64,000 nucleotides of DNA from Lytechinus pictus (GCF_037042905.1 NC_087251.1:39060001-39124000); one strand, 5' to 3'. Positions 28,823-57,600 are shown, counted from the first letter of the stretch. The notes: a model not told the origin generated them from the sequence alone. Numbers and translations: made by a program.

Positions 28823-29756
28823 AGTGTATAGAGTAAATTAATTCTAAGGATCGATCATTTTTAAATCTCAAATGATTTCATATCAAAATGCATCGGGCTT
28901 TAAAACTAAATATTCATGTTTCAAGCTAGATCCAGAATTCGATTCGTCCTTGACTACAATNNNNNNNNNNNNNNNNNNNNNNNNNNNNNNNNNNNNNNNN
29001 NNNNNNNNNNNNNNNNNNNNNNNNNNNNNNNNNNNNNNNNNNNNNNNNNNNNNNNNNNNNNNNNNNNNNNNNNNNNNNNNNNNNNNNNNNNNNNNNNNNG
29101 TTTACATACACCCATGGAATTTAGTGAAATTTGTTCGCTTGCCAAACATCGTAAAATTTACTTTATCTTCAGAAAAAAATACCACCATGACGAATTTGGT
29201 ATCAAAATAATAAAAGAGCATGTTAATCTCTTTCACATAATTGGAATGCCATTGGGATTAAAGTATATTTCAGGTGGAATTATCTTTGAATAAAAAATAA
29301 TATTTGTTCCAAATGTATTATGTTTGTTGTTTTATTTTCAAACATCGTTTCATAGAAATATAAAATGTCAAATCTTTGATTTATATAACATTTTCTATCA
29401 TGATATGTCACCATTGAACAAAAAAGTGTAATAAAAAATTTTTGTGTTGAGAATTAACTAGGTGACAAATATGAAATGTTTTTGTTAAGTTTTTATTTTT
29501 GATTTTTCTAAAATATGAAGATTTGGGGGCAAAAATGACACCTAAATATTTTTTAGCAACTGATGACAAAGCAATGTAATGAAGGGGCATGACATACTCA
29601 CTTGTTTGATATCAAATTCGTCATGGTAGCACAAAATTTCATAAGATACTGTACATTTTATGATTTTTGGCAAGCGAACAAATTTTGATATGAAATCATT
29701 TGAGATTTAAAAATGATCGATCTTTAGAATTAATTTACTGGATTTACTCTACACTG
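28823..29756. mobile_element. MITE with long TIRs, spanning N gap 28960-29099
   Basis: agtaaattaattctaaggatcgatcatttttaaatctcaaatgatttcatatcaaaat is inverted at about 29682-29739. Confidence 0.6.
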
Positions 29757-31270: not shown

Positions 31271-33425
31271 ATGCCAAGCAAGAAGAAGAAGTACAACGCA
31301 AGATTTCCACCTGTAAGTAACAACGGTTATTCATAAATGTACACTAGACCATCGTGTCCACGTAGCAGCGGCCCTCGATTCCCGACTGGCCGACCGATGC
31401 GTGATGCCTGCATGCAACCGGCTTGGGGCCTTGACCGCGGGGAAGCTTCAGGCGGTGTTTCGGCGGCGCGGCGGAGCTCGAGATCTTGAACTTTTTTGAA
31501 GATGTGCCGGCTTTGTCTGACTGAAAATTCGAACGATAACGTCAATAGCAGAGCCGAAATATAGCCGATCGCGATATTTAGGAAATGAAAAAATGAAAAT
31601 CCATATTTTATTGTTCGAAATAGACGTGAAATGAAATACTCCGAAAATTTGCTTTGCCCAATTGATCATGGGCCCGGCAGCCGCTGTGCAGCGCCAGATC
31701 GACAAGGCTCTATGTCTATCCCTTTAATCATTGAACGCCGAATAGGGTAGCAGCAACTCCCATCTTTTAACGTCTTTTGGTCTGACGCGGCCGGGGTTTG
31801 AACCCCCAACCTCCCGGTTGTGAGACGGACGCTCTACCAACTGAGCCAACACACCGGTAACAAAACTGGGCATATTGTTTATTGACCTCGAAATGTGACT
31901 GATACCTCGTCTTAACCTAGAGTCTACTGTTTTGGCCTGAAATGCACCAAAACTGGGAAAAATTTAAAAGGGAAAAACTGACTTACTTCGGCTGTCACGC
32001 AACTTCACTTCCCTGTTTTATTTGAACTTAATACATAAACATATGGGGCCTGTTGCATGACGAGATGAGCGATACGTAGGAACGTCCTAGGACCATTCTT
32101 CCGAGATATAAAGATTGGCGACAAATCAGCGCTTTCCGTTTCACGAAGGCAATTTTGTCTTCCAAGTCCGCGACATCATTTGATATCGATAGTATCGGAA
32201 AAATATTTAGTCTTCAACGTCACCTGAACATGTTATTTCTGAATGACGACTTTACATAAAATCCGATATTTCAATAAAAGGAGATCAAATAATGTTTTAT
32301 TTATTACTGATAGTAGAATTGATGTATGGAGCTTACTTTATGAGGTTAAAAGAGAAAAAACTTTAAAGATTCACAAACATAACTAAAATAAAATTGAAAT
32401 TTTCATTATTTCCCTTATTTAGAACACGGTGTCTTTTTAGAGACACCTTTTATTGATATTTCAACGAAAGAGACCCTTGTCCGACATAAAAATTGATTTA
32501 ACTATGTAATTTCGACATTTATTAGTTCAATATTCTGTATTTTTATAGAATACTTGTATATAATGATAATTGTGCAAATTATGTGTTAATATGTTATTTG
32601 TTGAGGTAAATATAGGGTTTGAATGGAGTAAGCAAAATCAACAGTGTCTGATTGTATGAGACTAAGAAGGAAAATATGAGATACGAGATGGCGGACACGA
32701 AAGCAAAAAATGCATTGCAGAAAAAAATTGAAGTCAACAACAAATTATCTTTAACAGAAATAAAACATCTCATTTTCAAAAGATACACTCTAGAATGGCA
32801 AAAAAGATGGAATGAATCCCATCGCCTACTTAAACTATACCATCCCACTGTTAACTCTCCCTTTTTTTGTTCCCTAAGTAGATTCCACGAAACCATTATC
32901 CACAGACTCCGTTTTGGTGTAATAGGATTGAACTACGATTTAAAAAGACTTAATATACACCCCACGGGACTTTGTGATACATGTAGGCCCAACAAATTAG
33001 AAACAGTTGAGCATTTTTTAATCGAGTGTCCCAAATATATAATAGAGAGAGCCATGCTACTTACAGAAACAAATCTATCAACCCCCCAAAAAATAATGGA
33101 TCTCTTAAAGAGTACTAAGGTAGAAACCCAATCTGCATTGGTCCGTTTCGTTCTCAGAACGAAACGATTATAAAGTCTGAATTTTCTCCGCCCCCTAATT
33201 TTGTATTTTTTATTTATTTATTTATTCATTATTATTAATTTTTTTTTCTACAAGAGTTAAATCTATGAAAGGGAGACACAAAGCAGAAGAAGATGCAGAC
33301 ACATGGTCGATTTTTACTCACTTTCCTATGGTCCTATACATTTTGATTATATATGTCATTTTACTACATCGACAACAGATAGCCCGTAACCGTAACGCGG
33401 AGCTCAGCGATCGTCGTGGATCCTG

Positions 33426-33654: not shown

Positions 33655-36600
33655 CACTTTCCTCCCATACTTTAGTTTTCGGTGTCCCGAAACCTGAAGT
33701 TTTATCAGGCCACAAATCCAGTTTACTTTTGTTTTCTCTATTGCAGCTTAATGTAGCAGAAGAAAATACAACGTGCTGCAAGAAACAGAACGCATAAAAA
33801 AAAGAAAAAAAAGGAAAATTCTTATTTTAAAAGGACAAAAAATACAATATGTCTATATAAGAAGAAAAGAAAAGAAAAGAGAAAAAATGAAACAAGAAAN
33901 NNNNNNNNNNNNNNNNNNNNNNNNNNNNNNNNNNNNNNNNNNNNNNNNNNNNNNNNNNNNNNNNNNNNNNNNNNNNNNNNNNNNNNNNNNNNNNNNNNNN
34001 NNNNNNNNNNNNNNNNNNNNNNNNNNNNNNNNNNNNNNNNNNNNNNNNNNNNNNNNNNNNNNNNNNNNNNNNNNNNNNNNNNNNNNTGAAAATGAACAAA
34101 AGCTGTGGCAAAAATAGTCAATCCTGACTGGTTGCCAACCAAGGAAAGAAGAAGAAGAAGAAGAGGCTGCATGTGAAAAATCTAATTTATTTATTTTATT
34201 TGTCAGATAAAATGCAAGAAATACAATGTGAGTGTTTAGAGTATAAACATACCTCAGTTGCATGATGAGTAACATAAGAAAATGAAAATATGAAAATTGC
34301 TGCAAACATGTCCAAGTGGATAAAGTAGTACTTTGCAATAATAATTAAAACATAGAAAAAGGTGTGAATCAATCCGCAATGGAAAAAATACTTTTACAGA
34401 AATAATGCTAAATATGACAACAATCATAAACGCTGGTCATATTTAAAGATGATCACTTATTTTATGGAAGTTTATATTATAGATATATGGACTGCTTTGA
34501 GAGGCATGGTTGTTTCTAGAGGCTCAAGGGGACCGCAACGCGACTATGCCCGAGGGCTTTGCCCGAGGGCATGGTCTGGCCGATGCGGTACCCGCGAGCC
34601 GAATTGAAACAACCATGTCTCGAATATAAAAGCAGTCCATATATATTTTATGAACCGAATTATTAAACATAAACGTTAGGGCTTGGTCTAGGTTTAGATC
34701 AAGTAAAACTAAAACAAAAAAGCCTGCCCCTGGCCTAGGCCCAAGGCTAACGTAAGGTCTAGGCCCTTACTTAGCCCTGCCCTGAAGTTAGGTCTCAAAT
34801 CGAATATCAAAGCAGTTCCCGAGCAGTTCATACCGATAGGCCCTACTAGGCCTAGGCTAGATATTTTTAGGAACCAAATTAGGGTCTGATTCTGAATAGG
34901 GTCTAGGGCCTACAGTGTAGCTAGATCTAAAGTTCAGTCTTAAAATTTAGACTAGAGTATAATCTAACGTTAGATCTAGTCGACTAAACCTACGTCCTAA
35001 CGTTAGATCTAGAGTCTACTCTTAACTTCTAAGCTAACGACAATTAACATTAGATCTACCTGTCCTAACGTTGTCGTTTGTCAATACCTAACTGTCCCAG
35101 GCTAAGGTTAAGTAACGACATGAACGAGTTAAACGTTTATTGTTAGAAAGTGCAGTGACCGTCTAATCTTTTCACCTGACTCACCTTTTGCGAGCATGCA
35201 TTTGAGCGAACTTCCCCAAGACTTGATGATTGATATACATCCGTTATGTCCTTAATAAGCTAGTTTTATTTTCAATAAATGCCATATATTTTAACAGGAA
35301 TTAACAAGCAAAAGTCAAAGATCGGCATCGTTCCATCGATATGTCATATCCGTTGCGCGCACTTGCGCAATAAGCGCGTAAATGCGCGAATTGTTTAAAA
35401 CTTTCGATCAAATCGCGCGGATATTTATGGTATCCGTAATCACCGCAGAAAGCAACATTTTGCATGCAATCAAATGGGGATTTCAGCCAAATTTTGCTAT
35501 GCCCGTCGTTAAGGGGCGGATCAGGGGGCAACGGGCAGAAATCTTGTTAACTATGCCCGTTGCCCTTGGTTACCACCTTAGTTTGTTGTTTTGAAGGCAT
35601 GGTTGTTTACATGACCTCAGTTTTGACCAATCAGAGGAACGGATTATTCGACATTCTTAAAGAGAGGTTTATAAAAGAATATAAGGTTTAAGAAATAACA
35701 TAAAAGATTAAAAATGCGCCTCTTCGTATGGACTTTCCATAATCTTTTCTTTAATGAACTTATCTTCATTTGTAATGATTGTGATGGATTCGTAAGCTAT
35801 AGGCTTAATCTGTATCTTAAATTCAATATTAGCTGCAGGTTTTTTGTTTTGTTTCACTGTTTCAAATCCAACAATTAATTTTCATTGATTAAAATAAATC
35901 TCAGCAAAAAAAATAATTATAAGGAAAATAAAATAAAAATAAATAAATGATTTAGCATGTTTAACATCTTAGTTTTGTTTGTCTTGTTTTTTTTTTTGCT
36001 GAATGTTATTGAACACGTTTTTTACCTTACATAATTTCTTTTAAAGAAATTTGTTGTTTATTTTTAATGAGAAAGCATGAGGGGTCGGCTAAAGAGATAT
36101 AGTGCCGCCCATTTCAAGTATTTCAAGTTTATTTTTTTAATAGAAAAGGGGTGGGGATAAGACAGAGGGAGAATAGAAGAAAACATATTTTAAAAATATG
36201 ATTTGGCCCTATACATTACCTCCGGGAATAATACATGTACCCCGGAGAAGTTAAAATGACATCCGTTTTTGGTCGTCCTGCCGTGCAAAAAGACGACCTG
36301 AAATTGATGACAACTAGCCCCCATATAAAAAATAACTTGGCGCCATCCCAGATAAAATGCATCAGAGTGCAACCAAAAAAATGTTTAGAGGTGATATGTC
36401 AGTGTGGCTTGCCTTAAATGCATTTTCTCTCAATGCCGACGGTGGCGGGCGGTGTGCAAAGAAGATCATGCCTACGTAGGACATGTCTGGAGGTGTCTTT
36501 CCAAGGACCATTCTTCGTATCGCCCAAATCGGCTTTGTGAAACAGTTGAGCGATATCTCGTTCTTACGTAGAATGGTCCTACGAAAGACCCTTGCATGCA

Positions 36601-39600: not shown

Positions 39601-42600
39601 TGTTTAGAATCATTTCAAAATTACTTTACACTTAGCAAAATATTTTCAAGAATAAGCAAACGCAGAGAGAAAAAGTGATTTATGACATCATCAGCTCATG
39701 AATATTCATCATATCCCATGATACGGTGATGTCATTTTACGCAACTAGATTCACGCGAACAGTCGTTAAATTGACCTGAGTTTTTTTATATGCCATGATG
39801 TGAGTGTAGACATTATGCCCATGAAAGGCTTGTATCTTTAGTCTTAATATGAAATATAGGCCTACATGTATTTGAAAAGGGAATGGGCACTGAATAGTTC
39901 TCTCTCTCTCTCTTGATGTTATATTTGATTTGTTTTCTCTTTGTTTCCTGCCATCACTCTCTCCATCTCGACACTCGCTCCCCCTCTCTCTCTTTAATTC
40001 AATCAATAATTACATATTATTTAATCATTTTCAATTCCTCTCTGTGTTTTGTCCGTTTCTTCATTCTCTTTACTCGGTCTCCGAAAATATATCACAATAA
40101 TTTTGACTTGAGTTATAGGCCTACGCTGACACCTTCGTAATTTTGAAAGATTGGTATAATGACAATCATATATCACATATTACTCTATTTCCACCTCAAC
40201 ACTACTATATCAGAAGCGTAATGAGCAAAAAAAAAAGGTTTTGGAACGGCCCGCCATGTATAAACTAGTAGTCTCAAATTATCGGTGATTAGTTTTTGTC
40301 TCGCCCACCAGAGATGAAGGCGTGTGTATGGTGGGTAGTTGATTCTAATAAATGGGGTGAAAATAATCACAATGGATGGTCAATGTGACATTATATCGTT
40401 GAGTAATCTTGCCAATATTTATACATTTTTTTTCTCTTCATAGTTAATTTTTTTTTATCAAGCAATAACCATTAATGGATTTTCTGTCGACAAATTCGAG
40501 CCCATCATGCAATTTTAACATGATTTGTTTCCATTTTCTATGTTAAAGTCTTTAACTCCAAACTTCAAACATCAGCCAAAGCCTTGGAGATCTTTGTCGA
40601 AGGTCTTATAACAAAAGCATCGCAGGAAACCCTCTCAAGGAATGCAAAGACTCTTACCACGTCTCACATGTAAGTGATAGATGATTGTTAAAAAGATTTC
40701 ATGAATTTTGAGTGCACTATGGAGCATTCTGACGATGACACATGGAAGATATTTTATTCTGAGTTACAGAACAGGTTCAACGATGTAGCCAATAGCGAGT
40801 GTGTGTGCAAGTCACATGTTCATGCTTAAAGGGATGGTCCAGGCTGAAAATATTTACATGTACAGTACCAGTCAGCAATCTTTGAGTACACGCGGTGAGC
40901 CATTTCCGGCCGTCGCAGCGTATTGACACTCGAATGTCACGCTAGAGCACACTCTGTCATGTCTTCGCGTGTTCTGATTTTTGACACTCGGGGTGTGTGT
41001 ATTGTTTACCGAGTGACAAGTGTAGAAGTGACACTCGGTTGGCGCTTGTGTGTCCGCTCGCTCTAGCCAAGTGTCAAGTGTAAAAAATCATTGCAGGTTA
41101 CCAGAATTTTTGATGAAGAAATTGACTCGTTGAATATAAGTTGATTTGTGAAGAATTATATCGAATTGGACACTCTTTTATAATGCTTTTGCGACTATCG
41201 GTTTCACTTTTGGCATCAACGAGTCAAAAACAATGGAGAAGACGACAATACAGGTACTTAACACCAATAAAGGAACGTCTTTGAACTTCCCCGAAGCTTT
41301 TATAAGGGAACAATATTGATTATTGACTAGGCTTGTAAGTACAGTATTAGCATAGCCGCCGTTTATGAAACTAGGACAATAGGTAGGTAAGCTGCATGTG
41401 ATAAAATGATACAATATTAGGCGGGAGATGCGTGATGATGAACAGAGAAAAATAACACGTCAAAAAGGAGTTATGGAATTAGGGGTTATTATGCTCTAAC
41501 GAAACGCTGACTTATGACATCATGATTGACACTTTTTTTGAGGGGGGGGGGTGTATTGCAAAGAACATCCTCTTCAAATGCATTCATGTAAGCGTGGATT
41601 CTACATAGACAGAAAAATAGTTGAATGCTCAAGGAAGGATAAACTTAAAGTTTTTTATGAGGTCAAGATGGTCTCCTTTGTTTTCAAACTATACAACAAC
41701 GACGCCTAAAGGCCAATGAAAATCATCACAAATCCATGTCTTGAATGACTTTTCGAAAAATCTTAAACGAAATGTCATTTATTCTCTTTGTAAAACATTC
41801 TTTATGCAATGCACACAAGGAAAAGTATAGTACTTGTAGCGCATTAATCATTGCATGACTTAGACTTCAAGTCGTAATCTTCGTTTTAATAAAAAGAGAC
41901 ATATGATTTTACCATGTTTACATGCATGAAGGTTTGTCCGAATCACTCTGTTTTTACAATAATATTCTATCGTCAATAATCAATGGCAGTGTTCACTTTC
42001 CTTCACTGGATTGGAATGATTGGAATGTCTATTTATAATTCTGAAACAATGAATTCGATGGTATTTCGAATACATAGGCCCGAATACTTTCTGCAGAGAA
42101 GGAGTGGGGGGGGGGGTAATCTTACGTTTTTATTACGTCATAATAAATTTCTCATCTTTTTCTTAAATCCATAACTCGGACCTACTCAGGAATGTTCGGG
42201 ATTTTATGTCATTCGTTTTGGCCAAACCAGTGAAAGAACTATAATTGACCATAAAAGAAAAACAACTTGATCCCCTTTAACCTGAATCTGACTTTTCCCT
42301 TTATTACAATCATCAGCAGGAACATGATTTTAACTTTGATATAGACTCTGTCAGAGAACTTTTGTTTTCTTGGTATTCTTTTGTGGCCGCTTCACAGACT
42401 TTTCATCCAGTTTGTCGAAATGAGGGATGATTGGTACGCGGCATTTCTTTTGCTTTTCATTGGCGGGTGAAACCTGAATGGGACAATGGGCGTAATCATG
42501 CACGACCCAAGCGGTGATTGGGCGAATCTTTAAATGGGCGGGAAATGAAGCTGTGATCAAGGGTCATTATTACAGTGAATAGATCTATGATCTGTTATGA

Positions 42601-45600
42601 GAGAATGAAAGGGGGGAAAACTAGCGTTATTCAGTCTTTTTGGTGTATTTATGTTAGTAGCGTTATTCAGTCTTGATAATTCCCAACCATTTTCCTATTC
42701 AGAATAAGGCAATATAAAATTAGGAAAATTAATTGACACATTATTAACCAATCTACATGACTATGATATTGAATATTCTACTACATTTTTTTTTAAATAA
42801 TAAAATTATTGTGAAATGAATTGAAACTATTAACGAATCTATATGATATTTGATATTCTAGTACATGTACATAACATTGAAAAGTCTTTGTTTTAATTAT
42901 TGTGGGAGCTATACTTAATAATTCATAAGTATACGCGGGTTCTTCTAACACAGAACACGAACAGATGAAGGGGTATTATGTTGATGGTTTGAAGGTTTGT
43001 GCTCAGCTGCCTGTGCTAGATTTAAATACAATGTTCAAATTAATTTGAAGATGACAATAAAAAGTAACACATCATCATGGATAAGACATACATGTAGGAA
43101 TCTTTGCATGATGAATATTCATGATTTGGTAAACCAGGAGAGAGGAGGGAAGTAATTAAGAAAGCTGAAGAGAAGTCCAATAGAGAAAGGAATTTTATAA
43201 TAAATGAGGGATGCAAGGAATGAAGGGTATATAGATGAGGGTACCAAAGGAGATGGGGATAACAAAGATAAATGAGGATAAAAGGCAAGAAGGGTAATGG
43301 AGACTGAAGAAAGGAGAAATGTAAATTAGCAGGGGCGGTGGGGGGGCTTTAGCCCCCACTTTAAAAAAAAAAACGTGCACAAAAACGTAAAAAATTACCA
43401 TAGGATTGTGATTTTTTGCATGATCAGCCCCCCCCCCCCCCACTTTGAAAACCGTTCCGCGGCCCCTGATCTGCTGATTAGGGTTATTTGGAGTATAGCA
43501 ATGAGATTAAAAGGTAATCCCTAATTACTAAACAAAAACTGCTATAAACTTGAATAATGTACAAAATAGCTCCCAACAATAGCTTGATATCAATCCAACT
43601 CGATTATGCCCCCCCCCCCAAAGAAAAAGTAATGATGTGAATCCTTTTTTGCTCTGACTACTCGAGTAAGAACCCTGGTACTCGGGAATAATATGTGAAG
43701 GCCTACATGTATATTAGCAACATCAAGATGCCTGTCGCTTAACTTCGCAATGTATTTGAAATTACAGGACTTGGCTTAATAATATATGCTACTTATTCCT
43801 TTCCCTTCCAGGGTGCTTGTGAAAAATTCTCCTGTATATTCATGTATAGGCACTAATTCCCCTCAGTGCAACGCCATCACTTCATCATTTCAGCTAATAT
43901 GTCAATGAGAATCCTATCTTCATGTCTGAATTAAAGAAATAAATCATAGAGCATTGGACTCATATCGCAAAGTTGTACATATAAGTTCAATGCAATGAAT
44001 ACATCAGTTGAATTGCGCAGGAAATGCGCTGATGTACATTCTATGATCTCCAGTATATATCGTATACTATTATTAGCATCATATTACTGAAAATGAACAA
44101 ATCTTAGTGCTTTTCATCAGAACCTTCAAAAATCCCCTAAAATGCACGAAAAATCCCCCAATTTATTTTAATCCCCTAATATTTTACCATCCCCAAGTCT
44201 TTTCAAATTCTCCAAATCTGGGGATGAAAATCCCCAAATAGTAACACTTGAGTCTATCTCAACTTCTCTTGATCCATTGCAATCTAGCCAGCAAGGCCGA
44301 GCGATCGCGCGCGGGGACTCCTTTGATTTCATTGTTTTGTTTTGTATACTAGTAATAGTCTTCAGCGTTTAGGCTTCCTTTTATTATTGCAAAATTGAAT
44401 GGGATGGGCGGAGCCAAATTCAGACAACAATAGCGCGCGGCGCGCCGCGATAGGCCAGCGCCAGGGGCCGGGGTTAAGCCCAAAGGTTAAGCCTATGGGG
44501 CCAGGTTAGCTGACAAGCCGAACCAGATCTTGAATCTCTATAAATACTCTACAAATGCTCTTGAAACCTTACAATCAATTCTGACTTTCGTCAAGACGTT
44601 ATCTCATCGCATTTACTTAATTTTACCTACACCACGGAATTAACCTGGTCCTCGTCGAACTCGTAGTTTGGTAGACCTGTACTAAGAGTTCGAGTCCGAC
44701 TGAGACACATCAGCCCTCCACTGCAGCAACTTGCGCCTGCCGATTGGTACTGTATCTGCTCTGCGGAGCTGAGACTACTGTCAGTACTGAGGCACCTAAC
44801 GACGTGACGCCGACGCAATCGCCATGGTAATCCAGTACCAGGCACGAGACCCAGAGAGCAGAATTTGGATGGCAGTCACCGTTTTGTCACGGAACGATTT
44901 GAGAGCCAAAGTCAGGTAATTCACTTTTGTTTCGACTTAACCCATTCCAATAAAAAAAGCATGCACTGTAAAAATGAAGTTCTAATTTAGCACTTACAGT
45001 GCGTGTAATAGTGAATGTACTACTTACTAACTTGGTACGAGTGCTGATTTTCTAGTTTAAAATTTGAACTAGAAAATCAGCACTCGTAGTGCAGTCACTT
45101 TACAAGCACTGTAACTAAGTAAGTGCTTAATTAGCATTTCATTTTTTACAGTGCATAGGCCTAGATCTAACGTTAGGGCCATAAGATAACGATGCAAATT
45201 TCATCAAAATCAAAATCTCGTCTCACTGACACCGGCAGTACTAATATTATTAGTGCTCACTCGATAAACATGTAGGCACTAGGTCTAGATCTATGCTATT
45301 TCTTTGATTTTTCCGTGCTTTGCATCTGAATTTAATGAATATTTTTAGTGTTTAAATGCTTTTCGGATATTACATGTACATGTTTATTCAATATAACTTT
45401 TTGTTGAGGTGGAATTGTCGGTTCAATTTGATGGAATATCATGAAATGTAGATATTGCTTTCAATATGGCAAGGAAATCATTTGTTGGTTGTACAATGTA
45501 CCAAACAAATTACTTACATGTAGTCTTCAGATTTGCTTTCGTCATGATTTTTGATTTGCTTTTATTATATATATTATGATTATTGGCCATCCGATTCTTG

Positions 45601-48600
45601 ATGTTGCTCCGACAAAATAGGGGAAATTGCTGGGGGGAAAAATTAATGTGAACAAACGCCACACCACTCATAAACTGTGTTGTGAATTTAAGCAAAACTT
45701 TAAAATGCCATAAGTTTCTTATTTCACGTCGGCTCATAATGACATGAAATTTTAATATTTCCAAAGTTTCTAACTGTTTCAAGCTGGCACAGGTTTATGC
45801 ATACTTTAACTGTTGAATCCGCCGCACTTATATACATTTTCATCGTTTTTTCATTCCAGATGGACAAACTACAGAAACATCATTTCGGATATTCCTACCA
45901 CGGACCTGAGGGTTTCTCTTTTGAAAAGGCTGCTACCTCGTGAACTGAATAAGGAACTGTGGCCTGGCACTTCGCCGTTCAATCTGCAATTGGGGGACAA
46001 ATTTCAACTTGTAAAAGGCGACGGTTCAATGGGCGAGATTGCTACTGTCAGGACAAACGACCCCTTTCGAGGAATAGTTAGTATTTACATTTGTTGATTA
46101 AGTTATACAAATGCATTCTGCATGAGCAAATTAATTGTTGTATATTTGTCACACTAAATGATACAGTATGCAACCACAGGAGATTAATTTCAAGTTGTGT
46201 GCTTGCCTACATAAGTGGTGTTTTACTTAAGTAAAATATAAATGAAGTGTTCTTTCGTTTAATGAATCTAAAATTGTTCATTAGATTAGAAATTGATCTT
46301 ACATCCATCCGAATTCCCTCGTTATTGCCACTTTATTTCATATCCACTGCTCTGCCTCTAAGTTTTGTGTAGATTTTTATTTACATATGTTGCACAATAT
46401 CCATGGTTCTGGTTTTATAATGTTTCAATCGATAATATAAACATCTCATTTCTGATCGAAATCTAAATTTAGATTGAAAGTGATTCTTAGTATTATTCAT
46501 GTACAGGTGTACACTGTGTTAACTTTCACATTTCACTCTCTTTTTATTAGATAACTACAACTGAACACGGAGGAAGGCAGTTTAGGTACGAGCATATTGC
46601 AGAGGCTCCAGAGCAAGATACCAATGTGCCTGTTCCTGTGCAACCTCCAAGGAAGCGTCCCCAGGTTGCTGATGCAGGTGACTGTGTTGAACCTTCAAGG
46701 AAACTTCAGAGAACATCAGGGAAGCAGGTTAGAAAATCAAATTTTTTGAGATGCAGCTTAAAGTTTAAACATTTTTCAAGTGTTAGAAAACAGCAAGAAA
46801 GTTGAAAGTTTTCATAAGAGGTCACTATGGGTGTGGGAATTCCAAAATTGGCTGCATAGACCTACAGATTGTACATTTACATGTGACTTTGAAATTGTCA
46901 AAGGTATGATTTTACAATTTCGCTGAAGTATTGATAAAAGTACAAGAATATTGTATTCTATATAATAATGACATTAATTCTGAAAAAACTTATGCACATT
47001 AAGATGCTCCTCTATTTTTGAAAAACAAATTGGTGCCTTTTCACTGCCGTAATTCAAATGATATCAAACTAAAGAAATTCTCTTTCTTTTCACAGAGTGC
47101 AGCAGGACCGATTAGAACAAAGAAAACTGCACCTCCACGGCCAGCAGCACCAACCTCCCAAGGCTACAACTAAAGTGACAAAGAAGGTAGGTTCATAGTA
47201 TGTATATTAATTTTTTACCCATTTGTGTTTTGCAGGGGGGGGGGTGAGTATCCTGCACCACTCTTCTGGTAAAAGAAAAGAAGTTATCACCAAGTACATC
47301 AAACAAGTTGTTCTGACTTAGAAAAATCTGATATTGTTAATATGCCGAGGGCTAATGACTTTCGTGCCTGTAGTGGTGTTCTATTTTTTTGTCATTTGTT
47401 TTTATTTCGGGGGGGGGGGGGGGTAGGCAATTGATTTATAATAATTTATTTACTACAATATTGGTAGTGATCAGAATTCCCACATGTAGGATTTCAGATT
47501 AAATAAATGAGTTGAATTAAACCAGCTACTTGATTACTTTTTTTATCAATATATTTAATATGATTAAAAGTCAAGTCCACCCCAGGGAAAAAAATGACTT
47601 GAATAAATAGAGAAAAATCAAACTAGCATAGTGCTGAAAATTTCATCAAAATCGGATGTGAAATAAGAAAGTTATGACATTTTAAAGATTCGTTTATTTT
47701 TCACAAAACAGTGATATGCACATCTAGGTGACTCAGTCGATGATGTCCATCACTCACTATTTCTTTTTTTTTATTGTTTGAATAATACAATATTTCATTT
47801 TTTATAGATTTGACAATAAGTACCAACTTGACTGAACCATATAGTATTAAACAATGGTAATTCCACATGTTCAGGGAGGAATTAATCGTTGTATCACTTG
47901 AAAATGAGGAGAAAATTTGAATATTTCATATAATAAAATACAAAAGAAATAGTGATTGGATAATGTCATCATCTGTCTCCTCATTTGCATACCGACCAGG
48001 GGCCCGTTGCATAAAAAATTTTACCTGAGAAAACTCAGGTTGTTTTTACCGGAGTTTTTGCCCTGTGTTAAAGTCAATGGCAGAAATCAGACTAACCTTA
48101 GTTTTCAGTTTTTACCAGAGTTTTCTCAGGTAAAAAGTTTTATGCAACAGGCCCCAGGATGTGCATAAACTGTGTTGTGAAATTAGGCGACACTTTAAAA
48201 TGTCATAATTTTCTTATTTTACATCCGATTTTGATGAAATTTTCAGTGTTATGTTTGTTGGATTTTCTCTTTTTATTCAAATCAAGTTTTTGTTAGGGTG
48301 GACTTGTCATTTAAAGGGAGATTGATTGTAAAACAAACATACCTGTGTTTCAAAATTTTATGTAACATCTTAAATTGATTATTCTACTTCTCTTTTTGTC
48401 TCCTTGCACAGAAAGCAACCATGATTGCCGGCCAGGCCCCACGCCCTGCTGTCAACTCCAAAGAAGGAGCAATGATGTACCACACCAAAACACCAATTGA
48501 AGACCTCGTAGCATTGGGTTTGCAGAGATTGGAAGAGATGAGGGAAAGCAGAGAGGTACCGCCAGAACCAACTGCAACTGCTCCTCGTCAACCTCCACCA

Positions 48601-51600
48601 CCCCCATCAGCACCTCGAGAACTGGTTCCACCACCTCCACCACCCCCACCAGCTGTAGAAGTAGCAGCCGTTCCTCGATCACCACCAGCCCCACCTCAAC
48701 GACGACCATCGCCACCCAGGGTACCGCCACTCCAACCAGCTCCTCGATCACCAGCATCAGTTCCTCAATCAGCACCCTGACTGCAACCGTCACCCAGAGG
48801 GCCATCACCCCCGCCATCTCCTCGATCACCAACGCCACCACCCAGACAAGCGCCACCTCGACGACAACCATCACCACCCAGAGGGCTACCACTCCGACCA
48901 GTTCCTCGATCACCAACACCACCCAGACGACCACCACCTCGAGGACCACCACCACCATCACCACCCAGAGGGCTACCACTCCGACGAGCTCCTCGATCAC
49001 CAACACCACCACCCAGACGACCACCACCTCGATCACCAACACCACCACCCAGACGACCACCACCTCGATCACCAACACCACCCAGACGACCACCACCTCG
49101 AGGACCACCAGCACCACGACGGCCGCCACCACCAGCACCACGACGGCCGCCACCACCAGCACCACGACGGCCGCCACCACCAGCACCACGATGGCCGCCA
49201 CCACCACCTGAACAGGAAGCACCGGTACCCCCTGCAGTGCTTTCACGAATTGCTGAAGACCCAGTTGTGGGTTTTTTGTGGGACAAGATTGTTGAGCTGA
49301 AGGAACAAGACAGAAGGAAAACCCAACAGATCAGCCGCATGGAGTTGGAAGTGAACCACCTGAGGAGTCTGCACAGCCAGAGTAATGTCAGATCAAACCG
49401 GGTCTGTAGTAGGGATGAAATCACAAGGCGGCTAGAGTTCGTCACAGTTGACGGCAAGAGAACGATGCAAGTGACAAAGCAGGTGATGGACTCTCTGCTC
49501 CCATTTGCCCCTTGCCACAGGGACGTATCGAGGAGACTGGGGAATCTTCTATTCCTGAGAGAAGAAAGGATCAACAGAAATGTGATAGGCATAAGGAATC
49601 CTGCTATGGACCCAGAGAGGATGGGGGCCATTCGCCGTGCAACGTTTGATTTGTGCCCGACAGGTGGAGAAGGCCAGGAACAAGTCTGGAAGAGGTGTGT
49701 GAAAGGGATCGACGCACAGAATCGTAACCTTAAAAGACGGACAGTGTGAGGCACAGTGACTTCCATCGCGACTATCAATTTGATGCACATGTTCATTTGT
49801 CATGATGACAAAGTGAAAATCTACTATTCTTGAAAATAAGTTCTTAAAATGTGTGCTATCCCGTAAAATAATTATTATTTAAAGAAATGAGCAAGACAGG
49901 CTATTTTTACATGTAGGTCACAGTTAACCGTTTTTCTATTTATAATTTGCCTTACACGTTTTCGTCGTTTTTTGTGAATACTACTTTTTTAATGCCTTTT
50001 TATGTAACTCATGCGATTTTTCATGTTATAGTCATATTGCAATTATTAGACTGTTGCAATGTACTACATGTATGACTTTTGCATCAAAATTTATTTAAGT
50101 GAAATATAAATAGTCCCATACAATTTTCATTCTATTAGGATAGTTAAGACAGACAGCCCCTTTTAGGTCATAATTCATCATATCTATAAATTACCCTACA
50201 ATTTTCACGTAAAATTTTCTTATTGATGAAAAATATAATATATAAACTCTTTTGAAATGGTCCATACGAGATTACACGATATATTTTATGAAGTTTATTT
50301 CAGGAAATGATCGATGTTTTTAGAGAATAATTGAATCATTTTAGATTTGTGAATTACGGTACATCTTTTTGCAATACATTTGTATGTAACTCAGGCGATT
50401 ACATCTGTCATATGCCAGTTGACTGTTGTACTTTTTGTCATGAAACAATCTGTAATAAAGTGAGTTTTTCACTGATTTTTTATTATTAATTGAATTAAAG
50501 AATGTTTATATGCAATGTCAATGGAGTGTATTAGATGTCTTTTGTCAGCTTATCAAAATAGTAGCATCATAAAATTGATTAAATACAAACTCAAGTAATG
50601 TTACTTTTGATATTCATTAATTTTCTTTCTTTCGGGAGAAGATGTAAATCATATCTAAATACCAAAGCATTGTTGCAAAACGACTTATGTAGGGCAAAAA
50701 AAAGAGAAAGACAGAAGGAGAACTAAAGGAATAAAAGGGGGAGAAGTAAAAGAAGGAAGGGAGGGGAAAAAAGGAAAGGGGGGGAAAAAGAAAGGAAGGG
50801 AGAGGGGGAAGGAAAGGGGTATATAGAAAAGGAGAAAGAAACGAAAGGAATGGAAGATGGGAAAGAAAAGGAAGGAAAAGAGAATATTAAGACATGAAAG
50901 GGAGAGGGGGGAAGAGAGAAAGAAAAGGAGAAGGGAAAGGGAGAGACGGAAGAAATAGCAAAGGAGAAAAATGCTGGGGGGAGAAGAGGACGAAACTTAG
51001 GGAAAGAAAAGGGGGAGCGAATGATTATAAAACACACGAGAGAGTTGATTGCCCATTTCATATCTTTAAATACTTTCTCCGTATATTTCTACCAAAATTT
51101 GTTATGCTTCATGAAGTTGTTTTCCTGGACCTGTAAGTGAAAGTGAGAAGAGATGGGCGGTGTGGTGTGGTGATTGGAGAAGAGCGAGGGAGAGAGAAAC
51201 ACGAGATTGATGGATAGGGTCTAACCATACTAAATGTCAAATCGTTGCTCCTCCCCCCCCGCTTCTTCTGCTTCTTTATCTCTCGCTCGATCTCCCCAAT
51301 CATTCTCCGGTTATCCGTCCCTTTATCTAACCCCACCCCCCCCCTGTATACTCTTCTCCCTCCGCAATTTTGTTTTTTACTCGCCTGAGCGAAAAAAGAC
51401 ACTTTTCCATCATTGTCCATGATGATGGTTTAATAGCAATATCCAACTTGTCTACTATCATTTGGTCTACCATCAGTTCTTCCACTATCCACATGGTATT
51501 TTTGCCATTTCGTCCGATAACCATTTGGTCCATAATAGCCATTTAGCCCGGCCATTTAGTCATTAAACCATTTGGTTATGGGTGAAATAAATGAAAAGAA

Positions 51601-54600: not shown

Positions 54601-57600
54601 TGTTACACACATCCGGGTTGGATGGCTCGCCGCGTGACCTCGTGTACTCAAAGATTGCTGGCTGGTACTGTATATCTATAAAAATAGAGTAAAATTCCCA
54701 GAGCAAAATGCTGAGAAGTTTCATCAAAATCGGATAACAAATAACGAAGTTATTGAATTTTAAAGTTTATCAATATTTTGTGAAAACAGTCATATGCACA
54801 TCGTCATGAATATTCATTAGGTGGGCTGATGATGTCACATCCCCACTTTCCTTTTTCTTATGTTATTACATGAAATCATAAATGTTTCATTATTTCATAC
54901 ATGTGTAAATGATGTGTCTCCATTGTGATGAAATAAGTTGCGGCAATAAATAATAATGCACTCAATCAGTTGTCAATCCAATTGTTTTAGTTCTTGGTAG
55001 AAAAATTTTGAATAAACCTAATTTCATATAATAAAATACAAAAGAACAAGTGGGGATATGACATCATCAGCCCACCTAATGAATATTCATAAAGACATGC
55101 CTAGAACTATTTCATCGGAATAATGCAAATCTTTAAACTTCAATAATTATTTGTTATCCGATTTTGATCAAATTTTCAGCATTTTGCTTTGTGAATTTTA
55201 CTCTATTTATTGACATATAAATATCTCCAGCCTGGACCATCCCTTTAAATTCTTAGCAACTTTCCAGTCATGAGTACTGTGCATTTTGGGTGCATCATTT
55301 TCCCCATTGCATATAAATTGCATATAAAAGCTGAGATGCCATCTGAAACCTGTTTCAAAGAAAAGAGTATGGAATTAATTTTGATGTGCTCTCAATAGGT
55401 GTGGATACTAGATATGCCTGTGATGTCATAGTATAAAGGCCTGTTTCATGAAACATGGACTTAAATGTAATCAAGTACAGTTGTGCTCATTACATTAATA
55501 TAGAGGTTGACCTTAAACAGCCTTTCACGATCATAACATTTGCTTTTCAGATGAAAATTCTTCCATATTTTTGTTTTTTTCCACAACATGCAAAAAAGGG
55601 CATGTTAACAGTTCAGAAACATTCATACCCATTCTATAACTGCATGTTAATAATCAGTGGCATATATCCTTTATTTGCAATGAATCCATCATTGCAAATA
55701 AAGGCTATAGTCCATTTATTATTAACTTGCAGTTACATCAGGGGTATGAATTTATTTAAAGAATAAAATGAGAACCTGTATTAGAAATACATATGAAAAA
55801 AAAAAAAATGTCGGGGTATGAAAGCTTATATCCAGTGGCGTACCTAGGATTTTTCACAGGGGAGGCAAAACCGTCCGCCAAAAAATTTGACAAGCAAAAA
55901 AAAAAAAAAGGTCTTCAATCACAAATGAAGGATTTCGTACCAGAAAAAAATTTGACAAGCAAAAAAAAAGAAAAAAAAAAAAGAGCTTCAAGCTAGTCAG
56001 GGGGGGGGGCAATAAAGGTCTTCAAGCTCGTCAGGGGGGGCAAAAAAGGTCTTTCAAGCTCGTCAGGGGGGGGGCAGGGATACGTCCTTTGCATGGGTTG
56101 TGGCTCGTCAGGGGGGGCAGACTGCCCCCTCTGCCCCCCCCCCCCCCCCCCGTAGGTACGCTAGTGCTTATATCTCTAACTATGTGACACTAGTTTCAGG
56201 TCACATGATCAAGGTCAAAGGTCATTTAGGGTCAACACACTTTGACAGTTGTGGTATTAATTTGAAAATGTAACCTAGGTTAAAATTTTGAAGACTTCAG
56301 ACAATTTTGTAAGTCCCCATTCCATAAAACTTTGATTATCAGTAATTGGCAAATGGACAAATATAATATCAGGTCAGAAGTTATTTGAGGTCAACGAACT
56401 TGGGATTTTATTATCAAATGAAATTTGAGGGGGTTTTTCATCTTTTTTTAAAAATGTATTCATCTTGGTTGTTTTCAAAGTCAGCACTGCTGCTATGTAG
56501 AATTGTGTTATGCAGGTACTTGTACTGTTTTGCACGTGTTACCTTTTTTTTTTCATACTTTTGCCCCAATGGGCAAGTTTATTTACAAAAAAAGAACACG
56601 TTTACAGAAGTCAAATTATAAACATTATTCAAACAAATGTTTCAACATACTCCATTTCAAATTAAAATCTTTCCTTTTTCCATTCAGATCACAAATGTAA
56701 CATTAATCCAAATAATAATTTTGTATTACCTTCTTAATCTTCTTAAAATCAGGTACAGTCTTGTTCAACCTCGAGAAATATAATTGTTGTTTTACTAAAA
56801 TGATAATACAATTCAGGGCATCATTTCGCTTTTCTTTATATCCAAACAAAATATTCTGTGGAGTAAATGTAAGAATAAACATAGGAGATGATATCCACGT
56901 TTCTATTTTACTCCAAATATTTCTACTAAAATTACAGAAGTAAAAGAAGTGTTCAATTGTTTCCTTTACAGTATAACAAAATGTACAGCACTCAGTATTG
57001 GTGATCTTTAGTTTGAATAAAATATCATTTAAAAACACAATTCTATTGAAAACTTTGTATTGGAAATACTTTATCCGAATGTCAGTTGTAAATCTGAAAA
57101 TCATCCTATTAAATTCCGGTATTTTAGTGTGATCCAAAATAATACATGTATTTGAATTTTTTCCCCATTTTGCTGCAATAGTTTTGGCTGAATCTTTATT
57201 TTCTATCAAAAGTTTATATATACTTTTACACCCCTTTTTATCACTCATTATAGGAGAAATATAAGGCATAACAAATGGTTCACATATTCTATGGTCTAGA
57301 TTTTGAAATTTTCGATTAAACACACATCTTAGAGCCTGAGAAATTAAAAAATATTCCAAAACAATGACTTTTAAACCAAACTTAGATTCACATTCAGTTA
57401 AAGATATAATATTTCCTTCTCGATCTATTAAATCATTAATAAATCTTATACCCTTTTCTTGCCAGTATTTAAAATAAACAGACTTTCCATCTATTTGTAT
57501 TTTACTATTTTTCCATAAAGGTTGCGCTAGCCAATTGATATTTTCAGATTTTTGAAATATCGAAAATAGCATGGCAAAAAACTCTTTCCAAAATGGATTA

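What the first reader, a model, noticed from the sequence alone, without database searches (positions are those of the whole stretch)
44824..46610. Tandem Tudor/chromo-barrel-like N-terminus that only appears after splicing
Exons 1-3 join to give YQARDPESRIWMAVTVLSRNDLRAKVRWTNYRNIISDIPTTDLR. This resembles the ARD..W..V....V.W/F..Y/W..D....LR pattern of Tudor/agenet/chromo-barrel folds. A second beta-rich unit follows (LQLGDKFQLVKGDGSMGEIATVRTNDPFRGIITTTEHGGRQFRYEHI). A histone-mark reader fused to a sequence-specific BEN domain would suit targeting or anti-silencing. Both fold and function are inference.
Basis: inference. Interest (0 to 1): 0.7.

Follow-up and report, generated by a model that had tools for sequence, protein, structure and literature searches.

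The report
Split Tudor/Agenet-like module, BEN gene
A sea-urchin gene really does splice three exons into a conserved 120-residue front end that probably folds like a Tudor/Agenet chromatin-reader barrel, but in this copy a frameshift and a stop codon cut it off from the DNA-binding BEN domain that its relatives carry.

Summary
The window is Lytechinus pictus and the gene is LOC129265206. Both introns lie at the same positions and phases in the only relatives found among 1.84 billion representatives: L. variegatus LOC121431373 and one Diadema setosum protein.

The fold reading is supported only by weak, converging evidence:
- No Pfam match.
- The only PDB profile hit is the tandem Agenet cassette of AGDP3 (E 0.037).
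- Language-model neighbours of two homologues are Agenet/Tudor clusters (0.83-0.87, below the 0.9 trust line).
- The Atlas model of the Diadema homologue lies nearest tandem-Agenet proteins (TM 0.45-0.49).
- AlphaFold2 of unit 1 alone (pLDDT 65) gives a small beta-barrel-like model with Tudor/SH3-like neighbours, all at Z below 5.

Unit 1 keeps invariant W15, W32 and Y35. Unit 2 has no aromatic set but carries the family's most conserved motifs.

The BEN fusion is real in the family. It is broken here: exon 4 is 91 nt, so the ORF stops at 47171-47173, and exon 5 carries an in-frame TGA at 48778-48780. Any histone-reading function is inference.

The parts
44667..44915 (+). Exon holding the start codon (ATG 44824, context GCCATGG). 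Its coding part 44824-44915 gives residues 1-30 plus 2 nt of codon 31, i.e. strands 1-3 of unit 1. 44667 follows an AG and the RNA contig has 30 unplaced letters before it, so a 5'UTR exon lies upstream.
   Evidence: (X17 record 9)
45860..46076 (+). Exon 2, residues 31-103. It holds the end of unit 1 (invariant W32, N34, Y35, up to about 45911), a helix/linker, and the first half of unit 2 from L73 (45984), including the invariant TNDPFxG motif.
46551..46727 (+). Exon 3, residues 104-162. It holds the last strand(s) of unit 2 with the invariant GRxFRYEH motif (to 46598), then an acidic/basic linker with PRKRP.
47096..47186 (+). Exon 4, 91 nt as spliced in the RNA contig. In the frame coming from exon 3 it ends at TAA 47171-47173, giving a 187-aa product. 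The +1 frame (..TTKVTKK) is the ancestral one shared with the homologues' VKKK motif. AG dinucleotides before 47103 and 47106 would give in-frame acceptors, but their use is not observed.
48412..50402 (+). Last exon. In the ancestral frame it holds a coiled-coil-like stretch, a Pro/Arg-rich repeat (about 48560-49210), a second coiled coil, the BEN-like domain and stop TGA 49747-49749. The 3'UTR is covered by RNA contigs to at least 50402.
   Evidence: X17 records 9-12
48778..48780 (+). In-frame TGA in the ancestral fusion frame. It is present in X17's RNA contig. Another individual's contig (X1) reads CGA here.
   Evidence: tables 3, 8
49549..49713 (+). BEN-like domain (residues 105-159 of ORF 49237-49749). 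It scores below threshold on Pfam PF10523.
40863..40891 (+). Left 29-nt terminal inverted repeat (CAGTACCAG...) preceded by TA. Context only, not part of the N-terminal module.
54642..54670 (-). Right copy of the same inverted repeat (28/29 identical), followed by TA. Together the two bracket the gene at a 13.8 kb distance.

Best explanation
LOC129265206 of Lytechinus pictus belongs to a very small, apparently echinoid-restricted family of nuclear proteins. The family plan, read from the L. variegatus and Diadema proteins, runs as follows: a conserved ~120-residue N-terminal module split by two ancient introns, a charged linker with a VKKK motif, a coiled coil, and a divergent C-terminal BEN-like DNA-binding domain. 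The N-terminal module most likely consists of two small beta-barrels. Unit 1 (residues ~3-45) is a divergent Tudor/Agenet-type SH3-like barrel. It keeps three invariant aromatic residues (W15, W32, Y35) at the positions where royal-family domains place ligand-pocket residues. Unit 2 (~73-120) is a second barrel without an aromatic cage, but it carries the family's most conserved motifs (TNDPFxG, GRxFRYEH). The inferred mechanism is that the coiled coil dimerises, BEN reads a DNA motif, and the N-terminal module gives a second contact to chromatin (a methylated or unmodified histone tail, or another peptide or nucleic-acid ligand). In the window's haplotype this design is interrupted. A 91-nt exon 4 shifts the frame, so the annotated and transcribed product is a 187-aa 'module-only' protein, and the downstream frame also carries a TGA. 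A second individual carries an 8-nt deletion inside BEN, which points to relaxed constraint on the C-terminal half in L. pictus. What is shown: the exon joins, conservation, family architecture and breaks. What is inferred: the fold (moderate support), the tandem arrangement (weak support) and ligand or function (no direct evidence).
For: Exon joins and the 187-aa ORF. Family and architecture. Conserved intron positions and phases, and the ancestral frame at the VKKK boundary. N-terminal module 44-45% identical between species with 38 invariant columns, while the linkers cannot be aligned. Fold leads: the only PDB profile hit is 7yta_A, AGDP3 AGD1-2, at E 0.037, spanning unit 1 strand 2 to unit 2 strand 2. 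Atlas feature neighbours of two homologues are Agenet, Tudor_3/SMN_Tudor, SAWADEE, Spin-Ssty and Tudor-knot clusters. The Atlas's own model of the Diadema protein, residues 1-120, is nearest FMRP/FXR and plant tandem-Agenet proteins at TM 0.45-0.49. AF2 of unit 1 gives pLDDT 65 with strands 3-8, 15-23, 28-33, 39-40 and a helix. Its weak neighbours include TDRD3, PHF1, PHF20, SETDB1, SMN, 53BP1, LBR, MSL3, SAWADEE, UvrD/PcrA Tudor and myosin SH3-like domains. BEN: Pfam E 8.7e-4 for the window and 0.004 for L. variegatus at the same place, plus BEND3 and BANP chains in the PDB profile search. Breaks.
Against: No statistically significant match to any Tudor, Agenet or chromo family. Pfam gives nothing even at E 10, the PDB hit is E 0.037, Atlas scores are below the 0.9 trust line, and all structural Z scores are below 5, where the tool's own notes say Z under 8 may be a common arrangement. 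AF2 of the whole 130 residues is poor (pLDDT 45) and finds nothing. The alignment has only three independent sequences. Unit 2 has no PDB or Pfam lead of its own, and its nearest shapes are TrmI-type N-terminal beta domains at Z 2.9. The first canonical cage position is Arg or Leu, not aromatic. The AGD2 cage residues of AGDP3 (10.1101/2021.03.08.434320) have no aromatic counterparts in unit 2 (alignment). Raw RNA-seq runs X21 and X22 show no reads on the exons, so expression is low.
Confidence: 0.55

Rival explanations
1. The N-terminal module is a pair of generic small beta-barrels (SH3-like, KOW or TrmI-N-like) that bind nucleic acid or a partner protein, not histone marks. The conserved Arg/His/Tyr-rich motifs of unit 2 (TNDPFxG, GRxFRYEH) form the functional site, and the resemblance to Tudor/Agenet is only a shared topology.
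For: The strongest conservation lies in unit 2, which has no aromatic cage. Unit 2's nearest shapes are TrmI-type N-terminal domains. The top structural neighbours of unit 1 include the non-histone Tudor-like domains of UvrD/PcrA, CarD/Mfd and myosin SH3-like domains. There is a weak Pfam hit to the MOV-10 beta-barrel for the Diadema protein at E 0.048.
Against: Sequence-based leads (the PDB profile and the Atlas features of two homologues) point specifically to Agenet/Tudor reader families rather than KOW or SH3. Three invariant aromatics sit at royal-family pocket positions in unit 1.
Confidence: 0.25
2. The locus is a decaying pseudogene in L. pictus. The N-terminal ORF survives by chance or only recently lost constraint, and no functional protein is made from it, so the module's function matters only in other species.
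For: Frameshift in exon 4 and TGA at 48778 in the window haplotype. An 8-nt and a 6-nt deletion in another individual's contig (table 4). Seven amino-acid differences in 181 residues between two L. pictus RefSeq versions. No reads in two deep RNA-seq runs. No orthologue at nucleotide level at the L. variegatus locus.
Against: The transcript is still spliced correctly and present in contigs of several runs. The N-terminal 162 residues are free of stops or frameshifts in both known haplotypes. The breaks all lie downstream of the module. Sea urchins are highly polymorphic, so the allelic differences are not unusual (own knowledge).
Confidence: 0.3
3. The module is not an independently folded domain. 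It is a conserved linear-motif region whose beta-propensity misleads the predictors.
For: Low AF2 confidence (pLDDT 45 for 130 residues, 65 for unit 1). No significant fold match.
Against: There is 44-45% identity over 125 residues between Lytechinus and Diadema, a divergence of some 200 million years or more (own knowledge). The pattern alternates hydrophobic residues in regular strands, while the flanking linkers cannot be aligned. Shallow alignments (3 effective sequences) routinely give low pLDDT. Secondary structure is consistent between the two AF2 runs.
Confidence: 0.07

Closest known systems
Tandem Agenet cassettes (plant AGDP1/ADCP1 and AGDP3 AGD1-2, PDB 7yta; FMRP/FXR N-terminal tandem Agenet/Tudor)
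   Same: Two ~50-residue beta units in tandem within ~120-150 residues. The motif GVW..A.V....V.W..Y in unit 1 and GD.V.....DG....V at the start of unit 2 align to AGDP3. The Atlas model of the Diadema homologue superposes on these proteins over residues 1-120 (TM 0.45-0.49). AGDP3 is itself an anti-silencing H3K9me2 reader (10.1101/2021.03.08.434320).
   Different: There is no significant sequence match and no Pfam Agenet hit. In AGDP3 the methyl-lysine cage (His97, Trp102, Phe119) lies in the second Agenet domain, whereas here unit 2 has no aromatics at the aligned positions and the aromatics are in unit 1. The partner domain is BEN, not KH or DUF724. The family is restricted to sea urchins.
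Single Tudor domains of the SMN/TDRD3/PHF1/PHF20/53BP1 type (royal family)
   Same: Strand order and length of unit 1. Aromatic residues lie in strand 2 and in the strand 3 / turn region (W15, W32, Y35). These domains recur among the weak structural neighbours (Z 2.5-3.0, about 45-50 aligned residues).
   Different: All Z scores are below 5. The first cage position is not aromatic. There is no Pfam match. Methyl-ligand binding is untested.
BEN-domain DNA-binding factors (BEND3, BANP, Drosophila Insensitive/Elba type)
   Same: A C-terminal ~80-residue region matches PF10523 in two family members at the same place (E 8.7e-4 and 0.004). It also pulls BEND3 BEN4 and BANP chains in a PDB profile search. 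A coiled coil lies upstream of BEN.
   Different: Scores are below Pfam's gathering threshold, and the Diadema member gives no hit. I found no described BEN protein with a Tudor/Agenet-type N-terminus in the paper library, which does not prove absence. In this window BEN is out of frame with the N-terminal module.

Membership tests
Tudor 'royal family' (Tudor/Agenet/chromo-barrel/MBT/PWWP; SH3-like barrel readers) | Significant match to a curated family profile or to a solved member by sequence | tested here: not met
   Pfam gives no family for exons 1, 2 and 3, for the spliced 65-aa unit 1 at E up to 10, or for P0001, P0002 and P0004. The only PDB profile hit is AGDP3 AGD1-2 at E 0.037. With unit 1 alone it is E 0.5.
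Tudor 'royal family' (Tudor/Agenet/chromo-barrel/MBT/PWWP; SH3-like barrel readers) | Five-stranded SH3-like beta-barrel of about 50-60 residues | tested here: inconclusive
   AF2 of unit 1 gives pLDDT 64.9 with four strands plus a C-terminal helix. Its neighbours are enriched in Tudor/SH3-like domains, but the best Foldseek E is 0.47 and the best VIA Z is 4.8, with Tudor chains at Z 2.5-3.6. The whole-module model (pLDDT 45) is uninformative.
Tudor 'royal family' (Tudor/Agenet/chromo-barrel/MBT/PWWP; SH3-like barrel readers) | Aromatic cage of 3-4 residues that holds a methyl-lysine or methyl-arginine | tested here: inconclusive
   W15, W32 and Y35 are invariant in all three species and align to the W, W and Y of AGDP3 AGD1. 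The position of the first canonical cage residue is Arg or Leu. Unit 2 has no conserved aromatic set apart from F100 and Y116. Model coordinates cannot be inspected, so the geometry is untested.
Tudor 'royal family' (Tudor/Agenet/chromo-barrel/MBT/PWWP; SH3-like barrel readers) | Binding of methylated histone or other methylated peptides | not testable with these tools
   This needs peptide arrays or ITC with recombinant protein.
Tandem Agenet/Tudor cassette | Two barrels packed as one unit with an inter-domain ligand surface | tested here: inconclusive
   The Atlas's own model of P0002, residues 1-120, matches FMRP/FXR and plant Agenet proteins at TM 0.45-0.49 with 88-92 residues aligned. That whole-protein model has pLDDT 0.49. 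hhalign finds no similarity between unit 1 and unit 2.
BEN domain (PF10523) | Score at or above Pfam's gathering threshold | tested here: not met
   Window ORF 19.9 bits and P0004 17.7 bits against a cut-off of 23.2. P0002 gives no hit. The PDB profile search gives BEND3 at E 0.079 and BANP at E 0.095, alongside chance ribosomal hits.
Reader-BEN fusion protein (as claimed for this locus) | N-terminal module and BEN in one open reading frame of the mature mRNA | tested here: not met
   In this window exon 4 is 91 nt in the RNA contig. The ORF stops at 47171-47173, BEN is in another frame, and TGA lies at 48778. The feature is met in L. variegatus LOC121431373 and the D. setosum protein.

The most novel reading that the evidence does not exclude
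An undescribed, sea-urchin-specific class of chromatin factors couples a highly divergent tandem Agenet/Tudor-type reader to a coiled coil and a BEN DNA-binding domain, giving dual readout of a histone state and a DNA motif. The L. pictus copy sits between Tc1/mariner-style TA-flanked 29-nt inverted repeats and may have been mobilised as transposon cargo. It is now polymorphic for a 'reader-only' 187-aa truncation that could act as a competitor of full-length family members.
Probability: 0.12. Interest if true: 0.6.

Novelty: new variant of a known kind. Interest (0 to 1): 0.35.

Why it matters
If the fold assignment holds, this would be a Pfam-invisible branch of the royal family of chromatin readers in a new combination with BEN. 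It would be a small, tractable case of how lineage-specific DNA-binding factors acquire a second chromatin contact. It also shows that RefSeq 'uncharacterized' echinoid proteins hide recognisable reader-like modules that appear only after splicing. The practical value is modest. The family has three known genes, this copy is broken, and nothing yet shows a ligand.

Tried and rejected
- Word-index protein searches with exon 2, with P0002 residues 1-125 and with the full-length alignment found nothing beyond the query clusters.
- The exhaustive search with exon 2 found only P0001, P0002 and P0004. It also found P0003, a tandem-repeat translation matching 29 linker residues six times, which I treat as spurious.
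- An Atlas search with exon 2 alone gave no usable hit.
- Pfam on each exon, on spliced unit 1 and on all homologues gave no N-terminal family.
- PDB profile searches with unit 1 or unit 2 alone gave nothing meaningful.
- AF2 on the 130-residue module gave pLDDT 45. Foldseek against PDB and the Atlas shape search on that model were uninformative.
- Internal duplication of unit 1 into unit 2 is rejected at the sequence level (hhalign probability 0.1).
- No paralogues of the gene lie inside the window (tblastn).
- The L. variegatus locus is not an orthologue. It shares no exon-level nucleotide similarity, only interspersed repeats.
- Neither the same inverted repeat nor any bracketing inverted repeat was seen around the L. 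variegatus or Diadema genes.
- The exon 4 start I first assumed (47097) is not preceded by AG. The RNA contig shows 47096.
- Literature searches for BEN combined with Tudor, Agenet, chromo or sea urchin gave nothing relevant.
Full report
**What is there.** The window is animal DNA. The exhaustive protein search with exon 2 (window:45861-46076) returned a 187-aa protein that is 100% identical (P0001). The cluster look-up names it XP_054759193.2, 'uncharacterized protein LOC129265206' of Lytechinus pictus.

Joining 44824-44915, 45860-46076 and 46551-46727 at canonical GT..AG sites gives exactly the two peptides quoted in the finding. When public runs were laid on window:44450-50440, one 943-nt contig of run X17 had no mismatches. 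It was placed as 44667-44912 | 45857-46076 | 46551-46724 | 47093-47184 | 48410-48590 (table 8). Two or three letters are shared at each junction, so these are the same joins as in the model.

Unique intronic bins have no depth in that run while exons have about 2.5. The contigs therefore derive from RNA or from a spliced copy. Two deep raw RNA-seq runs of the same species (about 6% of each was read) had no reads on the exons, so expression is low.

The exon with the ATG starts at 44667, directly after an AG, and the contig has 30 unplaced letters before it. There is therefore an upstream 5'UTR exon.

**Relatives.** Among 1.84 billion representatives only three real clusters match exon 2:
- the L. 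pictus protein itself;
- a Diadema setosum protein, P0002, 416 aa, 46% identical;
- L. variegatus LOC121431373, P0004/P0006, 452/453 aa, 39% identical, plus a partial paralogue, P0007.

A fourth hit, P0003, is a tandem-repeat translation matching 29 linker residues repeatedly, and I disregard it. Three word-index searches added nothing.

Over the first ~125 residues the three species are 44-45% identical with 38 invariant columns, while the following linkers cannot be aligned.

I fetched the Diadema and L. variegatus loci (L001 and L002) and reconstructed their exons. Intron 1 lies in phase 2 inside the codon before the invariant Trp (KV-K/R|W). Intron 2 lies in phase 0 after DPFxGx. Both are exactly as in the window.

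**Family architecture and the state of this copy.** The full-length homologues have this order:
- the N-terminal module;
- an acidic then basic linker ending in T.VKKK;
- a conserved APNFDLP..GM...LLQQN stretch and a coiled coil;
- a spacer;
- a C-terminal region that matches Pfam BEN below threshold (window ORF 19.9 bits, E 8.7e-4; P0004 17.7 bits, E 0.004; cut-off 23.2).

A PDB profile search with that C-terminal region pulls BEND3 BEN4 and BANP chains at E 0.08-0.28. The BEN assignment is probable but divergent.

In L. variegatus the exon boundary VKKK|V is in phase 0. The window has the same boundary (VTKK|K at 47186|48412), but only in the +1 frame of exon 4.

The RNA contig shows exon 4 as 47096-47186, which is 91 nt. 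Translation from ATG 44824 therefore ends at TAA 47171-47173 and gives the 187-aa RefSeq product. The BEN frame is not reached.

The earlier RefSeq version, P0005 (290 aa, from another assembly), runs ...PPRPAALSTTKVTKKKATM. That implies an 81-nt exon 4 in another haplotype.

The ancestral frame in the window also carries TGA at 48778-48780. A contig of another sample (X1) reads CGA there, but it has a 6-nt deletion at 49174 and an 8-nt deletion at 49659 inside BEN (tables 3 and 4).

AG dinucleotides before 47103 and 47106 would give in-frame acceptors, but I have no evidence that they are used.

It is broken in this haplotype, and the C-terminal half looks to be under relaxed constraint in L. 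pictus.

**Fold of the N-terminal module.** Nothing reaches significance.

*Sequence-based evidence:*
- Pfam finds no family in any exon, in the spliced 65-residue unit 1 (up to E 10), or in any homologue's N-terminus.
- A profile of the 5-sequence alignment against all PDB sequences gives a single hit, AGDP3 AGD1-2, a tandem Agenet cassette (7yta_A), at E 0.037. The alignment runs from strand 2 of unit 1 to strand 2 of unit 2. With unit 1 alone the hit drops to E 0.5, and unit 2 alone gives only chance hits.
- The Atlas language-model search puts residues 1-125 of both P0002 and P0001 nearest to clusters carrying Agenet, Tudor_3/SMN_Tudor, 53BP1_Tudor, SAWADEE, Spin-Ssty and Tudor-knot. Scores are 0.83-0.87, below the tool's 0.9 trust line.

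*Structure-based evidence:*
- The Atlas's own model of P0002 is nearest to FMRP/FXR, plant Agenet and ENT-Agenet proteins over residues 1-120 (TM 0.45-0.49, about 90 aligned residues), and to myosin N-terminal SH3-like domains.
- AlphaFold2 on the 130-residue alignment gave pLDDT 45 and useless searches.
- On unit 1 alone AlphaFold2 gave pLDDT 64.9, with strands 3-8, 15-23, 28-33 and 39-40 and a helix at 47-55.
- Foldseek found nothing better than E 0.47. Its weak list contains the MSL3 chromo-barrel, LBR, PHF20, PHF20L1 and SMN Tudor domains, SAWADEE and myosin SH3-like domains.
- VIA-align gave a best Z of 4.8, to an uncharacterised phage protein. UvrD/PcrA Tudor, an SH3, ERCC6L2, TDRD3, PHF1, SETDB1, 53BP1 and SMN Tudor domains followed at Z 2.5-3.6, with 45-50 aligned residues at 2.7-3.8 A.

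By the tool's own calibration these Z values prove nothing on their own.

Four independent kinds of weak evidence point to the same superfamily, so I put unit 1 as a Tudor/Agenet-like barrel at about 0.65-0.7.

W15, W32 and Y35 are invariant and align with the W, W and Y of AGDP3's first Agenet domain. The Tyr of that motif contacts unmodified H3K4 in the AGDP3 complex (10.1101/2021.03.08.434320; the residue numbering match is my inference). The first canonical cage position is Arg or Leu.

**Unit 2.** Unit 2 is predicted as strands (78-83, 88-93, 114-119). It carries the family's most conserved motifs, TNDPFxG and GRxFRYEH. It has no aromatics where AGDP3's second domain has its methyl-lysine cage, and it shows no profile similarity to unit 1. 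Its only shape leads are TrmI-type N-terminal beta domains at Z 2.9 and TM 0.3, from a low-confidence model. I put 'a second barrel forming a tandem cassette' at about 0.45-0.5.

**Mechanism.** The best-supported reading is a dimeric (coiled-coil) BEN-type DNA-binding factor whose N-terminal two-barrel module provides a second contact. That contact would most plausibly be to a histone tail or another peptide. Nucleic acid is a serious alternative, given the Arg/His/Tyr-rich invariant motifs of unit 2.

Only the anatomy is shown. The ligand and any 'anti-silencing' role are inference.

In this window the expressed ORF is a module-only protein with a basic tail (PRKRP...KKTAPPRP). This is either a truncation allele of a decaying gene or a stand-alone isoform.

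**Context.** An exact 29-nt inverted repeat (28/29) lies at 40863-40891 and 54642-54670. It begins CAGTACCAG and is flanked by TA on both sides. No transposase ORF lies inside. The homologues' loci show neither this repeat nor any bracketing inverted repeat within 10 kb. Mobility was not tested further here.

**Verdict.** This is a plausible new combination (a divergent royal-family-like module plus BEN) in a tiny echinoid family. The fold evidence is below significance, and the copy in this window is truncated. Interest is modest.

Noticed in passing
window 47450-48450 (intron 4): Very high-copy interspersed repeat, with word depth of 10^4-10^5 in contig runs and transcribed on both strands in RNA-seq. 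It has internal inverted arms at 47614-47700 / 48180-48266 and a nested hairpin element at 47996-48158. Related pieces lie at 45689-45745 and 54716-55211 and in the L. variegatus locus L002.
   Followed up: partly
window 40863-40891 and 54642-54670: Exact 29-nt terminal inverted repeats (28/29), each flanked by TA and 13.8 kb apart, enclosing the gene and no transposase ORF. They are themselves nested between arms of another repeat (40826-40861 / 55213-55248).
   Followed up: partly
window 48560-49210: Expanded Pro/Arg-rich repeat (units like PPRRPPPRSPTPP) that is absent from the Diadema and L. variegatus homologues. It creates long spurious antisense ORFs (48452-49246 and 48765-49796 on the minus strand).
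   Followed up: no
window 45036-45088 (intron 1): Near-perfect 26-nt palindrome (96% complementary, 1 nt loop) inside a moderately repeated segment. Contigs of two runs lack one base at 45059.
   Followed up: no
window 44539-44546: TATAAATA about 125 nt upstream of the exon start at 44667. Because that exon follows an AG and the RNA contig carries 30 unplaced letters, the true first exon and promoter remain unplaced.
   Followed up: no
window 31783-31855 (-): tRNA match (Rfam RF00005, 35.6 bits), the only Rfam family in the window. N runs lie at 28961-29099 and 33900-34086 and were left untouched.
   Followed up: no
L001 (Diadema setosum OZ188190.1, 28240126-28263734): The Diadema homologue lies on the same strand inside the span of a gene call for an RRM protein that runs over the whole locus, so it is probably nested in an intron.
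   Followed up: no
window 50700-51030: Long purine-rich (GA/GGA) low-complexity tract just downstream of the gene's 3'UTR.
   Followed up: no
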